64,000 nt of DNA from Octopus sinensis (lineage: Eukaryota). Where the stretch lies: contig NC_043005.1 of assembly GCF_006345805.1 (NCBI RefSeq), positions 56,358,001-56,422,000 of the forward strand, in the 5' to 3' direction. This document shows positions 27,326 to 43,554 of the stretch, piece after piece (position 1 is the stretch's first letter; each line of letters opens with the position of its first letter). The position numbers and the translations under genes are program-made. The notes beneath the pieces were generated by a model. The model was not told the DNA's origin and searched no databases. It was given only the letters and a program-made list of their open reading frames with translations.

Positions 27326-27392
27326 CTAAACTGTTCCTTGCTGTTTTAATCTGTGTTTGAAGGTAACATCTGCTTTGTTTCTGATACCATAC
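27326..27392 (-). CDS. SNRNP25: SNRNP25 last coding exon
   Basis: ttgtag|G TAT...GTT TAG. YGIRNKADVTFKHRLKQQGTV* resembles YGIRNRDEVSFIKKLRQK. The five exons total 495 nt = 164 aa + stop. Confidence 0.94.
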
Positions 27393-29203
27393 CTACAAAA
27401 TAAAGAACATTCTAACAATAATAAAAGTTAGAATTCCCATATTTCTACAAGAAACCCTACATGAAGCAATTAAAAATTTGTTTGCTTTTATTATTTTTTT
27501 CTTCTTACAGTTTAGATGGAGGATGAATGACAGTACACCAAACCCTTTTCTGGACACTGAGTTTAGTGACTAACAGAAGGATGGAAGTTATCTTCAGACC
27601 AGGCATGGACTTAGCTGTGTGGTTCCAGGTTCAGTCCCACTGCATGGCACCTTGGGCAAGTGTCATCTACTATAGCCTCAGGCCTACCAAGGCTTTGTGA
27701 ATGGATTTGGTAGATGGAAACTGAAAGAAACCCATCATATGTATGTGTGTGTGTGTATCCCACCACTGCTTGACAACTAGTGTTGGCTTGTTTAGATCCC
27801 CATAACTTAGCAGTTTGATAAAAGAAACCGATAGAATAAGTACCAGGCTTAAAAAAGAGAAAACAGAAAAAGTACTGGGGTCGATTTATTTGGCTAAAAA
27901 CTCTTCAAGATAGTGCCCCAGCATGACCACAGTCTGATGACTGAAACATGTAAAAGATAAAGAACCACAAGGTTCTATGTAGTTTCTCTCAACCAAATTA
28001 CATGCAGAATATTTTGATCATCTTGATCAGTGGTTCCTAAAGAGGGTGGTAGAAAGATCAAGAGAGACGTTGAAGAAAAGTGGAGCATTAATAGGGTGGC
28101 CAAAAAGGGGCGATGGATGTGATCCCCAACCCCACAAAATAACGGGTTAATTACGTTAAGTTTTATTTGTGAAATACTTTTGTAAGAATACTAATGTAAG
28201 ATTACTTCACTTGATAAAAAATTAATGTTTCCCCAGGGTGCAGTGTTTTCACCTTAATTGAATAGAGCAACAGAGACAAACAGCATTTCATATACTATCT
28301 CAATATAGTTTACATGAATGTAAGGTGGGTGAGCCGGCAGAATTGTTAGCACACCATGCAAAATGCTTAGTGACATTTCATCTCTCCTCATGTTCTGAGT
28401 TCAGATTGTAAGGACAGGGACAATAAAATAAGTACCACTTGAGCACTGGGGTTGATGTAACTGACTTACCCTCACCCCCAAAATTTGAAACCAGTATAGT
28501 TTACATGAATAATCAATCCTACAAAAGGAGAGACTGACAGAAATATTTACCTGACCTTTGAGAAGGGTAGGCCAATCGATTGACAATTCATTTATCCCAA
28601 AGCTACAACTGTTCCAATTCATACAAATTAAAATGTCCACTGCACCCCCATGTCATACACAGTATATTAATTTTTAAATTTAAAAAAAACATCTAAAATT
28701 TTGAAGAAAAAAGAAACAAGCTGTTTCTACAACTTTGTATTCTTTTATTCATTTCAGTCATGCTAAGTACCATCTTTAGTCAAACGAATTAACCCCAGGA
28801 CTTATTCTTTGTAAGCCTAGTACTTATTCTATCGGTCTCTTTCGTCAAACTGCTAAGTTAGGGGCACATAAACACACCAAAATCGTTTGTTAAGCAATAG
28901 TTGGGGGACAAGCACAGACAAACAAACATATGCATATATGTGACCTTTGTGACACAAATTAGAAACATTTCCAATCTGGCCAGCTTCCAAGAAAATTATG
29001 CTGACCCTTACATAAACTGTATGCAGTCATACCTCATTTTCAGTATATATGTCTCACTACTGCAAGTTTGATTCTGATACATCATAACCAACTTTTCCCT
29101 TTCAATTACTATAAGTTCCCTATTTTTACTGTCTGTATTTCACTGCCACACAACATTACACATATACTTCAAACTACTTCAAAATGAAATAATGACAACT
29201 TAC

Positions 29204-29278
29204 TCTTTCAAAGGTTTACTGTCATCTGACAATTTCTGTCCATCAAAATACAGCCAATATCTTTTCCAAATGTATCGC
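29204..29278 (-). CDS. SNRNP25: SNRNP25 coding exon 4
   Basis: atgcag|G CGA...AAA GA|gtaagt. RYIWKRYWLYFDGQKLSDDSKPLKE. Confidence 0.94.
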
Positions 29279-31308
29279 CTGCATAAGTTAAAAATGTAAT
29301 CCAGATATAGCATCAATACAAGTCATGTATTTCAAAATACAATCCATAAGCTAACAAGATGAGATATAAAAATTGATAGAAGAGTGCAGGCTTAGTTATA
29401 TATTCAAGAAGTTGATTTTGCAATCATGTGCTTCTTTGGTTGGTGCCACTGTGCAGTAACTTGGGCAATATCTTCTTCCATAACTTCAGAGATTGAACAA
29501 TACCTTGTGAATGGAATATGGTCACCAGAAGTTGCTGGAGATCCGTGCGTGTGTGCGCGTGCATGCATGCATGTATGTTCGTCCACTCTGCTAGGTGGTT
29601 GGTATTAGGAAAGGACATCCAGTTGTAAAAACCATGTCAAAACAGACACAGAAGTTTGGTGCAGGCTTCTGCCTGACCAGCTCCAGTCAAATCATCCAAC
29701 CCATGCCAGCATGGAAGGCAAATGTTAAATGATAATGATGATATACATAATACAATACACTTCCTATTTCCAATCATCTGTCATACTATTTTGACTCAGT
29801 ACACTTACCTACACATCCACCTTTTCCCCTCTTTTATCCTATTCTGTCTCCTATTCACTTTGTACCTGGACCTCACAGCTCTTTTCCAACCCATGTCAGC
29901 ATGGAAAAAAGTATGTTAAATAAAGATGATATATACATCTATAAAATCATAATCTTAATTTATATAAATTTTCCATGTTGGCAAGGGTTGGGCAGGTTGT
30001 CACAGTCTAAGCCAGTTCTTATTCTAAGCTACTACCCTTTTTACACAGGTTACAAGACCACCAGATATCAATACATATACACATGTGTATGTATTTGTTT
30101 TCATTTTCTGTAATACATTTCGTCTATCTAAGAGGGATATATATCTATTATGTTTTTTAATGGTTTCGTCTGAAGGAAAAGGCTATGTTCAAGCCCTCCA
30201 ACAGAGGTGAAATTCATATAGCTAATGTTCTTGAACAACTTCATGTTGATAACTGCAGGAAAAATCATTGGCAGGGAGGGAATTCCTCTGGGGAGGAGGA
30301 AGTTAGCATATCGTGGTTAGTGTGAAACCTAGGTGGTAAGATACAATATGGGTGACAAGAGAAGGAGGGAGAAGTAAGTCAGGTGAGGCTGGATAGAGGT
30401 GACACAAGGAGCAGAAGTAAAAGGAATAGCAGGAGGCAAAGAAAAGAGACAGTACGTCTACATGTCAGATGTCGGAGAGGGTTGGTGAGCAATTCCATGC
30501 CAATCAGTTAGATGTCATTGTCAAAATACTCACCTTCTAAGCCTACAGAAAGCCATCTTAGTAAGGTCGAGTCTTTACCTAATATGTGGAAGCATGTGGT
30601 TTAGTGGTTAGGGTGTTGGACTCATGATTGTAAGTTTGTGATTTCGATTCCTGGACCAAGCAACATGTTATGTTCTTAAGCAAAACGCATCATTTCACGT
30701 TGCTCCAGTCCACTCAGCTGGTAAAAGTGATTAATCTTGAAATGGACCAGTGTCTTCTCCAGGTGTTGAACTTATGCACCATGGAAACCAAAAAACTGGA
30801 CCTTATGATTCAGCATGACAAAAGAAGGAAATCTTTAACCTACCTAATATTATATAATCACATGCAGATATAAACAACAACCTTGTGATCTGCTAATACT
30901 GTGCACTGTCTCCTCTCTCTACCTTTTCTACCATTACTATAAAGGCCTCTGCTCCTTGAAACAGTCTGGTTTCAAACCACATTCATTCAGGTACTCTAAA
31001 CTCTCTCATCTTGCTTCTCATTATACACAATAACATAATATCCACACTCCCCACCACCAACGCCATGCCTAACCTCTTCTTCCCAGAATGTTAATTTTAT
31101 GGAATTCTCTCCTTGTAGGTGCCTTTCTTACAGTCATCAATTCGCAACAGTATAAGTCGAATTTTAAAGGCATCAATTTCCACAGTCTCAAAGAAACTGT
31201 ATAAACCAAACTAGTAAAAAAGCCAATTACAAGCCCACACTCTAGTCTGCAGACCAGCTAATGTTATATAGTTATATAATTACATTTACAAGGATCCGGT
31301 CCACTTAC

Positions 31309-31414
31309 CAGCTGATGTGTTCAGGGCCATTCTGTCTTGCTTGCTTCAATTGTACATATCTTTTGATGGCATGTTTCAGATCTAACACTGTGGCATCCTG
31401 TACAACCACAACAC
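31309..31414 (-). CDS. SNRNP25: SNRNP25 coding exon 3
   Basis: tgttag|GT...AGC TG|gtaagt. VVVVQDATVLDLKHAIKRYVQLKQARQNGPEHISW resembles human VVVVQSATVLDLKKAIQRYVQLKQEREGGIQHISW. Confidence 0.96.
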
Positions 31415-41930: not shown

Positions 41931-42222
41931 TATAATATGTGAGTGGACAGATAAAAGTAACACTCAGCACACTTAGTAGGACGTACATATATTTTTAAAC
42001 AGTAGTTTGATTCAATTCTGTATGACTTGAAGTTTTGTCATTGTGTTGGAAGAACTCATTTCACCAGAAATCAGATATCTCCCAATATCTGATGAGATGG
42101 GTTCTTCCTATGTGCCCACAAAACTTTGTTATATGGAAGTGGATCAAACTTTTGAAGTATATATATATTACATACACACACACACATGCACATATATATA
42201 TATGTATGCATACACATATATA

Positions 42223-42735
42223 TCATCATCATCATCGTTTAACGTCCGCTTTCCATGCTGGCATGGGTTGGACGGTTTGACTGGGGACTGGTGAGCCAGA
42301 TGGCTGCACCAGGCTCCAATCTGATCTGGCAGAGTTTCTACAGCTTGATGCCCTTCCTAACGCCAGCCACTCCGAGAATGTAGTAGGTGCTTTTACATGC
42401 CACCGGCAAGAGGGCCAGCCAGGTGGTACTGGCAATGGCCATGCTCAAATGGTGTTTATATGTGTCACCTGCACAGGAGCCAGTCCGGTGGCACTGGCAA
42501 CGCCCTTTCTCGAATGTTGTTTTTCACGTACCACTGGCACAAGTGCCAGTAAGGTGATGCTGGTAACAATCATGCTCGAATGGTGCTTTTTACGTGCCAC
42601 CAGAACGGGGGCCAGTCAGCAGCCCTGGCAACGATGATTCTTGGATGGTGCTCTTAGAGCTTCACTAGCACAGATGCCAGTCATGCGGTGCTGTCATCAA
42701 ATTTGATTTTGATTTCACTTGCCTCAACAGGTCCC
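42223..42735 (-). mobile_element. 5'-truncated RTE 3'UTR copy with about 5 diverged 60-bp units
   Basis: (TCA)n tail, tttaacgtccgctttccatgc, ggatgcccttcctaacgcca-type body, repeated ggtgc(t)ttttacgtgccac units. Shorter copies at about 194-465, 32905-33217, 35745-35905 and 40366-40625. Confidence 0.8.
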
Positions 42736-42895
42736 ATATATATATATATATATATATATATATATATATATATATATATATATATATATATATATATATA
42801 TATATATATATATATATATATATATATATATATATATATATATATATATATATATATATATATATATATATATATATATATATATATATATATAT
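42736..42895. repeat. (TA)80 microsatellite
   Basis: Uninterrupted 160-bp TA run. Many shorter (TTA)n, (TCA)n, (CA)n, (GA)n and (TAGA)n tracts occur across the window. Confidence 0.97.
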
Positions 42896-43426
42896 TACAC
42901 ATACATATATATATATTACACATACATATATATATATATTACACATACATATGTACATATTGTGTGTGTATTTAAAAGTTTTTTGCCCCAAAAATACTTG
43001 ATACACTCACAATATTTTTTTTAACTTTTCATAAAAGTTAACTATTTTAAAAAGATCATTTTTGAAGAGCACAATGTAACAAACATTTTGGAGAGAAGTT
43101 TTCATATTGTGTTTATTGTAAGTACTCTCACTGTTCAACCTTTACATGTATATGTGTGTGTGTGTGTGTGCAATGTGTGTATATATTGTGTTTGTGCATG
43201 TTTTTGTACACAAATATGAGAACCACCAGTTATAAAAAGTCTGTTGACTACTCTCAGCCATTTTCAAGTTCCAGTTGCAATATATTTATTTTTGTATCTT
43301 GAAAAGTAGAGTGTGTACTTTGCAGTAATCTTCCCCTTTATTTTCTTTCATACAAGAAATCAATAATATTCTTCAGTTTCAGTACATATTTTCATTTACC
43401 TTTTTCTTATATCTTCCATTTGATAG

Positions 43427-43554
43427 AAACTTGTCCCAAGTGTGAGCATGGACGAGCCTATTTCATGCAGATTCAGACTCGGTCAGCTGATGAACCTATG
43501 ACAACATTTTACAAATGCTGTAATGTAGAGTGTGCACACCGATGGAAAGACTGA
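43427..43554 (+). CDS. POLR3K: POLR3K exon 3 (TFIIS-like C-terminal Zn ribbon)
   Basis: tgatag|AA ACT...GAC TGA. (E)[41 protein letters not shown], with the QTRSADEP catalytic loop. Total 327 nt = 108 aa + stop. Confidence 0.97.

What the first reader, a model, noticed from the sequence alone, without database searches (positions are those of the whole stretch)
27326..43554. SNRNP25-POLR3K head-to-head pair, as at human 16p13.3, in a genome that appears to be octopus
Seen: complete SNRNP25 (-) and POLR3K (+) with start codons 997 bp apart and divergent. Known: the same two genes are adjacent and divergent at the telomeric end of the human alpha-globin region, and coleoid genomes are heavily rearranged. 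Inference: the pair may have been held together since the protostome-deuterostome split by a shared promoter, co-regulating a minor-spliceosome protein and the Pol III cleavage/termination subunit. The other human neighbours (RHBDF1, MPG, NPRL3) are not seen here.
Basis: partly seen in the sequence, partly recalled or inferred. Interest (0 to 1): 0.75.

Follow-up and report, generated by a model that had tools for sequence, protein, structure and literature searches.

The report
Ancient divergent POLR3K–SNRNP25 gene pair
Two housekeeping genes, one for an RNA polymerase III subunit and one for a minor-spliceosome protein, sit back-to-back in octopus as they do in humans, and also in a mussel, a limpet, a brachiopod and a sea star, so the arrangement is probably inherited from early bilaterian animals and is one more example of a known kind of conserved gene pair.

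Summary
The window is Octopus sinensis/vulgaris. It holds a complete SNRNP25 on the minus strand (5 coding exons, 164 aa) and a complete POLR3K on the plus strand (3 coding exons, 108 aa). The two genes diverge, with 996 nt between their start codons.

I looked at the same locus in other animals. The head-to-head pair is also present in Mytilus, Lottia, Lingula and Acanthaster. The literature reports the two genes as neighbours from fish to mammals and as a divergent pair in human and six other vertebrates.

A third gene, TBCEL-like, lies tail-to-tail with SNRNP25 in octopus, Lottia and Acanthaster. This makes convergence very unlikely and dates the block to the bilaterian ancestor.

The pair is not universal. 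No partner was found within 10 kb in an abalone, a sea urchin, amphioxus, a priapulid, a horseshoe crab, a jellyfish or a sponge. Arthropod SNRNP25 sits behind COX19.

The octopus intergenic region lies in a 1.9-kb domain where CpG is not depleted (observed/expected 1.1 against a window median of 0.31). This fits one shared promoter domain, but no start sites, expression data or shared motifs support that directly.

Verdict: real and ancestral, a new member of a known class (conserved bidirectional pairs). The promoter mechanism is inferred. Interest is moderate.

The parts
27326..33415 (-). SNRNP25 (U11/U12 snRNP 25K), complete CDS of 164 aa. Coding exons: 33415-33293, 31999-31876, 31414-31309, 29278-29204, 27392-27326.
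   Evidence: exon models, GT-AG introns. (100% identity and coverage to Octopus sinensis SNRNP25). (PF18036, E 2e-32).
34412..43554 (+). POLR3K (RPC10/C11), complete CDS of 108 aa. Coding exons: 34412-34522, 40176-40263, 43427-43554.
   Evidence: (100% identity to Octopus vulgaris RPC10). (PF01096, E 4e-19). The same two intron positions occur in Lottia, Lingula, Acanthaster and Rhopilema.
33416..34411 (.). Divergent intergenic region of 996 nt between the two start codons; the presumed bidirectional promoter region.
   Evidence: sequence. (27% GC, CpG o/e 1.13). (no repeat copy elsewhere in the window). (no motif shared with the other species beyond shuffles).
33251..35500 (.). CpG-undepleted domain covering the intergenic region, both first coding exons and the start of POLR3K intron 1.
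   Evidence: CpG o/e is 1.11 over 33400-35300 against a window median of 0.31. Only 1% of equal-sized windows reach this value.
2242..15032 (+). TBCEL-like gene (LRR plus C-terminal ubiquitin-like domain), 3' part, tail-to-tail with SNRNP25. Recognised exons lie near 2287-2391, 6003-6704, 11023-11163, 12649-12813 and 14910-15029. The 5' end is probably left of or near the window start.
   Evidence: tblastx, collinear with the Acanthaster L011 13167-19602 gene and the Lottia L007 1-2530 gene. (collinear with human TBCEL residues 131-419, E 3e-30; the human sequence was recalled from memory). (LRR_4). (weak TBCE match).

Best explanation
POLR3K and SNRNP25 form an ancestral bilaterian head-to-head gene pair that octopus has retained despite coleoid genome reshuffling.

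Shown: the two genes are divergent neighbours in Cephalopoda, Bivalvia, Gastropoda (Lottia), Brachiopoda and Asteroidea. The literature places them side by side across vertebrates. In octopus, limpet and sea star they belong to the same three-gene block: TBCEL-like, then SNRNP25 in the opposite direction, then POLR3K diverging from SNRNP25.

Inferred: both genes are transcribed outward from one short, probably unmethylated promoter domain. A breakpoint inside that domain would strip at least one essential housekeeping gene of its promoter elements. Rearrangements there are therefore removed by selection, and co-expression follows as a by-product.

Where the pair was lost, the locus suggests how:
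- retrocopy replacement (intronless SNRNP25 in Priapulus, intronless POLR3K coding sequence in Tachypleus);
- capture of a new 5' neighbour (SNAPC1 in amphioxus, COX19 in arthropods).
For: Gene models and spacing.

Head-to-head pair elsewhere:
- Mytilus L001: 165 nt between the called coding sequences.
- Lottia L007: about 1.2-1.6 kb.
- Lingula L010: 368 nt.
- Acanthaster L011: 1843 nt.
- One unidentified eukaryote contig, L028.

Third shared neighbour in the same orientation in Octopus, Lottia and Acanthaster.

Vertebrates: the divergent pair is listed as conserved in 7 vertebrates, with a human distance below zero (PMC2871058 supplement). The genes are adjacent in platypus, cod and other teleosts. 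Human co-expression has PCC 0.70 and mutual rank 1 (PMC3024869 Table 4).

Promoter domain: CpG o/e is 1.1 against a median of 0.31, a top 1-2% value. The intergenic region carries none of the SINE copies that flank it at 33005-33218 and 35745-35900.

Class context: conserved ancestral pairs are enriched for 5'-5' orientation and for spacings under 1 kb (PMC3514665).

Chance (inference): a given gene pair is adjacent in a random order of about 2x10^4 genes with probability near 10^-4, and head-to-head in about a quarter of those cases. Several independent origins, each with the same third gene, are therefore implausible.
Against: The pair is absent within the 10-kb flanks in:
- Haliotis;
- Lytechinus;
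- Branchiostoma;
- Priapulus;
- Tachypleus;
- Rhopilema;
- Halichondria.

On a plain count of events, two or three gains would compete with many losses. Only the very low prior for a gain, plus the TBCEL neighbour, settles it.

No transcription start, expression or methylation data exist here for octopus. No known or de novo motif is shared among the five intergenic regions beyond shuffled controls. The spacing is 1.2-1.8 kb in Lottia and Acanthaster, which leaves room for two separate promoters.

TBCEL has stayed linked in three lineages without any shared promoter, so linkage alone does not prove a promoter constraint.
Confidence: 0.7

Rival explanations
1. Neutral persistence. The pair is ancestral but has survived only because the gap between the genes is a very small target for breakpoints and the neighbourhood happens to be quiet. 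No shared regulatory element or selection for co-regulation is needed.
For: ATG-to-ATG spacings are short wherever the pair survives (165-1843 nt). TBCEL, which shares no promoter with SNRNP25, has also stayed adjacent in octopus, Lottia and Acanthaster. No motif is conserved across species. The pair has been lost often.
Against: The head-to-head pair outlasted the TBCEL link in Mytilus, Lingula and vertebrates. No sampled lineage kept TBCEL-SNRNP25 while losing POLR3K. Survival in coleoids, which lost much ancestral microsynteny (PMC9023564), and across about 600 million years in four phyla is more than small target size alone predicts for most pairs (PMC3514665). Human co-expression is very high.
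Confidence: 0.2
2. Functional coupling. The linkage is kept because Pol III output and the minor spliceosome must be balanced. U6atac, a limiting minor-spliceosome snRNA, is a Pol III transcript, so the shared promoter acts as a dosage-coupling device for this particular gene pair.
For: In amphioxus, where POLR3K is gone from the locus, the head-to-head partner of SNRNP25 is SNAPC1, a subunit of the snRNA-gene activating complex. In the sponge Halichondria, POLR3K lies 237 nt downstream of a PRPF6-like spliceosome gene. Human POLR3K and SNRNP25 are each other's best co-expression partner.
Against: These are post hoc single observations. Many animals with a working minor spliceosome have separated the genes. 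POLR3K serves all Pol III transcription, not U6atac in particular. Most conserved bidirectional pairs show no functional relation (PMC2871058).
Confidence: 0.07
3. Convergence. The two genes came to lie head-to-head independently in lophotrochozoans, in sea stars and in vertebrates.
For: The pair is absent in the sampled cnidarian, sponge, amphioxus, sea urchin, priapulid and arthropods. A plain event count therefore favours a few gains.
Against: The prior for one specific pair becoming adjacent and divergent is about 10^-4 or lower per lineage (inference). Octopus, Lottia (protostomes) and Acanthaster (a deuterostome) share the same third gene in the same orientation. Several of the 'absent' cases look like secondary escapes: intronless copies in Priapulus and Tachypleus.
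Confidence: 0.03

Closest known systems
Human and vertebrate POLR3K-SNRNP25 (C16orf33) bidirectional pair at 16p13.3, upstream of the alpha-globin cluster
   Same: The same two orthologous genes in the same divergent orientation at close spacing. The vertebrate pair is already listed as a conserved, co-expressed head-to-head pair (PMC2871058 supplement, PMC3024869, PMC2529266).
   Different: In human the 5' ends overlap; in octopus the ATGs are 996 nt apart. The octopus promoter region has 27% GC, so it is not a vertebrate-style CpG island, although CpG is not depleted there. The flanking genes differ: TBCEL-like in octopus, with no RHBDF1, MPG or NPRL3 recognised. The earlier systematic survey found the pair in vertebrates only.
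Conserved ancestral microsyntenic pairs (CAMPs) with bidirectional promoters, for example HSPE1-HSPD1 (Irimia et al. 2012, PMC3514665)
   Same: Non-paralogous neighbours kept in 5'-5' orientation with short spacing across protostomes and deuterostomes. They are housekeeping genes, and they are lost in fast-evolving lineages.
   Different: HSPE1-HSPD1 encode partners in one complex and are linked even outside animals. POLR3K and SNRNP25 have no established functional relation, were not linked in the one sponge and one cnidarian examined, and have been separated even in slow-evolving amphioxus. I could not check whether this pair is on the CAMP list, because the supplement is not held.
Genomic regulatory blocks (bystander genes kept next to developmental regulators)
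   Same: Long-term retention of gene order caused by cis-regulatory constraint.
   Different: No developmental regulator and no large gene desert are involved here. Any constraint lies within a promoter of 1 kb or less, not in dispersed enhancers.

Membership tests
Bidirectional (head-to-head) gene pair, sensu Adachi & Lieber 2002 / Trinklein 2004 | Two protein-coding genes on opposite strands, transcribed away from each other | tested here: met
   SNRNP25 on the minus strand with its ATG at 33415; POLR3K on the plus strand with its ATG at 34412.
Bidirectional (head-to-head) gene pair, sensu Adachi & Lieber 2002 / Trinklein 2004 | Transcription start sites less than 1 kb apart | tested here: inconclusive
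   The start codons are 996 nt apart, so start sites lying between them would be under 1 kb apart. No start site is mapped, and 5' non-coding exons cannot be excluded from sequence alone.
Bidirectional (head-to-head) gene pair, sensu Adachi & Lieber 2002 / Trinklein 2004 | CpG-island-like, unmethylated promoter domain spanning both 5' ends | tested here: inconclusive
   CpG o/e is 1.11 over 33400-35300 against a window median of 0.31. GC is only about 27-35%, so the vertebrate CpG-island criteria are not met. Methylation was not measured.
Bidirectional (head-to-head) gene pair, sensu Adachi & Lieber 2002 / Trinklein 2004 | Correlated expression of the two genes | not testable with these tools
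   Only human data are available (PCC 0.70, mutual rank 1; PMC3024869). No octopus expression data were accessible.
Conserved ancestral microsyntenic pair (CAMP; Irimia et al. 2012) | Non-paralogous genes adjacent in several phyla on both sides of the protostome-deuterostome split | tested here: met
   Mollusca (octopus, Mytilus, Lottia), Brachiopoda (Lingula), Echinodermata (Acanthaster). Chordata from the literature.
Conserved ancestral microsyntenic pair (CAMP; Irimia et al. 2012) | Orientation conserved (5'-5') | tested here: met
   Divergent in all five invertebrate loci. Listed as divergent in human and six other vertebrates.
Conserved ancestral microsyntenic pair (CAMP; Irimia et al. 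2012) | Conserved intergenic sequence or shared cis-elements | tested here: not met
   No known motif and no k-mer is shared among the five intergenic regions beyond shuffled controls. At these evolutionary distances the test has low power.
Human 16p13.3 block POLR3K-SNRNP25-RHBDF1-MPG-NPRL3 | RHBDF1, MPG and NPRL3 following SNRNP25 | tested here: not met
   The gene beyond the 3' end of SNRNP25 is TBCEL-like. The long ORFs elsewhere in the window matched only LINE domains. Short exons of other genes could have been missed.

The most novel reading that the evidence does not exclude
The pair is kept not merely because a shared promoter is hard to split, but because it links the supply of snRNA transcription machinery to that of a minor-spliceosome protein. 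On this reading, when POLR3K leaves the locus, another snRNA-transcription gene takes its place at the SNRNP25 promoter, as SNAPC1 has in amphioxus. SNRNP25 would then be a gene that is repeatedly wired, through a bidirectional promoter, to the machinery that makes snRNAs.
Probability: 0.07. Interest if true: 0.6.

Novelty: new member of a known kind. Interest (0 to 1): 0.35.

Why it matters
The result adds a well-anchored example to the set of gene pairs that have stayed head-to-head since the bilaterian ancestor, and it comes from a coleoid genome known for heavy rearrangement.

An earlier 64-species survey found the pair in vertebrates only (PMC2871058). Extending it to molluscs, a brachiopod and a sea star, with TBCEL as a third anchor, gives a small natural experiment. 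The same promoter architecture has been kept in some lineages and dismantled in others, through retrocopies or new 5' partners. That allows a test of whether bidirectional promoters are truly constrained or merely hard to hit.

It does not change our understanding of Pol III or the minor spliceosome unless functional coupling is shown.

Tried and rejected
- Known promoter motifs (CCAAT/NF-Y, ETS, NRF1, YY1, CRE, ZNF143 SBS, DRE, M8, E-box, Sp1, TATA, PSE-like) and unbiased shared 6- to 8-mers across the five intergenic regions: nothing beyond shuffles. A CAYGTGA element occurs in all five regions, but this is not significant.
- Rfam and tRNA scans of the window, to look for a Pol III gene or snRNA in or near the pair: none found.
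- Xenopus look-up as an in-tool vertebrate control: the protein was not on record. Vertebrate evidence therefore rests on papers.
- Supplements of Irimia 2012 are not held. Supplements of Schmidbaur 2022 mention neither gene. No paper links TBCEL with SNRNP25 by synteny.
- Metagenome scan for more loci: 22 loci, only one of which (L028, organism unknown) carries both genes.
- The Rhopilema LRR gene head-to-head with POLR3K looked like a possible TBCEL relative. It shows no similarity to the octopus gene and was dropped.
I did not pursue it by pasting sequence, so the absence of RHBDF1, MPG and NPRL3 is not rigorously shown.
- The bacterial promoter/terminator scanner was judged irrelevant to an animal genome and was not used.

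
Full report
**1. What is in the window**

tblastn with human POLR3K and SNRNP25 sequences, recalled from memory and used only as probes, found three POLR3K segments on the plus strand and four SNRNP25 segments on the minus strand. The first SNRNP25 coding exon came from the ORF list.

Reading the exon borders gave complete models in which every intron is GT-AG:
- POLR3K: 34412-34522, 40176-40263, 43427-43554; 108 aa.
- SNRNP25: 33415-33293, 31999-31876, 31414-31309, 29278-29204, 27392-27326; 164 aa.

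The finding's coordinates, 27326-43554, run exactly from stop codon to stop codon. The start codons are 997 positions apart, with 996 nt between them.

Both proteins are 100% identical over their full length to annotated Octopus sinensis/vulgaris proteins. The Pfam domains are as expected.

**2. The human and vertebrate comparison**

The order POLR3K-C16orf33(SNRNP25)-C16orf8-MPG-C16orf35 upstream of alpha-globin is described for platypus and other mammals (PMC2529266). The two genes are adjacent in cod (PMC2975663) and in other teleosts (PMC4730296).

A 64-species gene-order survey lists RPC10-SNR25 as a divergent pair. It gives a human intergenic distance below zero and conservation in seven species, all vertebrates (PMC2871058 supplement).

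A study of head-to-head pairs reports human co-expression with PCC 0.70 and mutual rank 1 (PMC3024869 Table 4). The vertebrate pair is thus already known. Its presence outside vertebrates did not appear in anything I could search.

**3. Survey of other animals**

I used all twelve genomic look-ups, then ran tblastn of the octopus proteins against each fetched locus. The gene calls returned by the look-ups are coding-sequence ranges, so the distances below run from ATG to ATG.

*Head-to-head pair present*

| Species | Group | Spacing |
|---|---|---|
| Mytilus galloprovincialis | bivalve | 165 nt by the calls; 204 nt from the conserved POLR3K start |
| Lottia gigantea | limpet | about 1.2-1.6 kb; SNRNP25 model partial |
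| Lingula anatina | brachiopod | 368 nt |
| Acanthaster planci | sea star | 1843 nt |

A scan of metagenome contigs added one unidentified eukaryote contig (L028). It carries POLR3K exon 1 and a SNRNP25 exon in divergent orientation.

*No partner within 10 kb on either side*

| Species | Group | Note |
|---|---|---|
| Haliotis rufescens | abalone | upstream 10 kb is full of tandem repeats, so the gap may simply be larger |
| Lytechinus variegatus | sea urchin | none |
| Branchiostoma lanceolatum | amphioxus | head-to-head partner is SNAPC1 |
| Priapulus caudatus | priapulid | SNRNP25 is intronless |
| Tachypleus tridentatus | horseshoe crab | POLR3K coding sequence is intronless |
| Rhopilema esculentum | jellyfish | none |
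| Halichondria panicea | sponge | none |

Further negative evidence:
- Contig lengths place the two genes on different scaffolds in Plakobranchus and Gryllus.
- They place them on the same scaffold or chromosome in Mizuhopecten, Babylonia and Tachysurus.
- Gene models in Strigamia and Leptotrombidium fuse COX19 to SNRNP25. One transcript-like contig (L012) carries COX19 followed by SNRNP25. In arthropods the 5' side of SNRNP25 is therefore occupied by COX19.

**4. A third anchor gene**

tblastx of the window against the fetched loci showed that plus-strand exons at about 2.3-15.0 kb are collinear with two LRR genes. One lies just beyond the 3' end of SNRNP25 in Acanthaster (L011 13167-19602). 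The other lies beyond it in Lottia (L007 1-2530).

The stitched octopus fragment has LRRs followed by a ubiquitin-like tail. It aligns collinearly with human TBCEL residues 131-419 (E 3e-30; the human sequence was recalled from memory, so the gene name is a lead rather than a database result). It matches TBCE only weakly.

In all three species the order and orientation are the same: the TBCEL-like gene runs towards SNRNP25, SNRNP25 runs back towards it, and POLR3K diverges from SNRNP25. Two protostomes and a deuterostome sharing the same three genes in the same orientations is the strongest argument against independent assembly of the pair.

**5. Ancestry**

Counting events naively, the many lineages without the pair would favour a few independent gains. 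But the chance that one specific pair becomes adjacent in a random order of about 2x10^4 genes is near 10^-4, and lower still for divergent orientation (inference). The TBCEL anchor would have to be regained as well.

Losses are easy by comparison, and some leave traces. Intronless copies in Priapulus and Tachypleus point to retrocopy replacement. This is inferred from the two introns at conserved positions in POLR3K, and the four in octopus SNRNP25, seen in the other animals.

I conclude that the block dates at least to the protostome-deuterostome ancestor. The single jellyfish and single sponge sampled do not show it, so an older origin is unsupported but not excluded.

**6. Mechanism**

The 996-nt intergenic region is AT-rich (27% GC) and has CpG at the expected frequency (o/e 1.13). 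The window as a whole is strongly CpG-depleted (median 0.31).

The undepleted domain runs from about 33.25 to 35.5 kb, across both first coding exons. Only 1-2% of equal-sized windows match it. In a genome with germline methylation this is what a constitutively unmethylated promoter domain looks like. That reading is an inference, since methylation was not measured.

The region has no copy elsewhere in the window, although SINE copies sit on both sides of it in the first introns.

In Mytilus and Lingula the start codons are so close (165-368 nt) that two independent promoters are hard to fit. In Lottia and Acanthaster there is more room.

No transcription-factor motif is shared among the five species beyond what shuffled sequences give. 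This test is weak at such distances.

The shared-promoter explanation matches the known behaviour of conserved ancestral pairs, which are enriched for 5'-5' orientation, spacings under 1 kb and co-expression (PMC3514665). For octopus it remains inferred.

**7. Rival explanations**

- Neutral persistence through small target size is a serious alternative. The survival of the TBCEL link without a shared promoter gives it some support. However, the divergent pair outlasted TBCEL in Mytilus, Lingula and vertebrates.
- A specific functional coupling between Pol III and the minor spliceosome is attractive but rests on anecdotes: SNAPC1 replacing POLR3K in amphioxus and a PRPF6-like gene next to POLR3K in the sponge.
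- Convergence is very unlikely.

**8. Verdict**

The causal claim is plausible but untested.

The phenomenon belongs to a well-described class, and the vertebrate instance is already catalogued. This is therefore a new member of a known kind, of moderate interest.

Noticed in passing
window 2242-15032 (+); L007 1-2530; L011 13167-19602: A TBCEL-like gene (LRR plus ubiquitin-like tail) lies tail-to-tail with SNRNP25 in octopus, Lottia and Acanthaster, giving a three-gene block shared by protostomes and a deuterostome. It is absent within 10 kb in Mytilus and Lingula. By my recollection, human TBCEL lies on a different chromosome (11q23.3) from the pair.
   Followed up: yes
L003 2742-8702 (-) and 10001-11351 (+): In Branchiostoma lanceolatum the head-to-head partner of SNRNP25 is SNAPC1, a subunit of the snRNA-gene activating complex, 1.3 kb away. 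So one snRNA-transcription gene (POLR3K) has been replaced by another at this promoter. This may be chance.
   Followed up: no
P0040 (Strigamia), P0255 (Leptotrombidium), L012 35-259 and 382-852: Arthropod gene models fuse COX19 to SNRNP25. A 1.45-kb transcript-like metagenome contig carries COX19 followed by SNRNP25 in a different reading frame. This suggests a dicistronic or read-through COX19-SNRNP25 transcript in arthropods.
   Followed up: partly
L006 10001-10558; L009 21937-22260; L013 9748-10170: SNRNP25 is intronless in Priapulus and in an unidentified metagenome eukaryote. The POLR3K coding sequence is intronless in Tachypleus. Orthologues elsewhere have conserved introns. These look like retrocopies, which would be one way for a gene to leave the pair.
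   Followed up: partly
L005 1177-9764 (+) and 10001-10598 (+): In the sponge Halichondria panicea, POLR3K lies 237 nt downstream of a PRPF6-like spliceosome gene on the same strand. A DnaJ/Ras-like GTPase gene follows 100 nt later. The locus is very compact.
   Followed up: no
window 46750-51500: A second large CpG-undepleted domain (o/e about 1.0-1.3 over nearly 5 kb) contains no ORF with a Pfam match. It could be the promoter or first exon region of an unrecognised gene downstream of POLR3K.
   Followed up: no
window 61181-62907 (-); L001 3886-4431: A LINE fragment with reverse-transcriptase and endonuclease domains (PF00078, PF14529). A distantly similar element (27% identity over 107 aa) sits inside the Mytilus POLR3K intron.
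   Followed up: partly
window 252-463, 17807-17979, 26655-26837, 33005-33218, 35745-35900, 40413-40617, 42227-42435, 44808-45020 and others: A dispersed SINE-like repeat of about 200 nt has at least 15 copies in the window at 72-90% identity. Copies lie in the first introns of both genes but not in the intergenic region.
   Followed up: partly
L010 12305-12698 and 14377-14770: The last two coding exons of Lingula SNRNP25 occur twice, about 2 kb apart, with identical translations. This is either a recent tandem duplication or an assembly artefact.
   Followed up: no
window 56411-57202 (+): A 264-aa open frame without a Pfam match. Its last 60 residues or so are hydrophobic, like a first transmembrane exon. 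It could be the start of an unrecognised membrane-protein gene.
   Followed up: no
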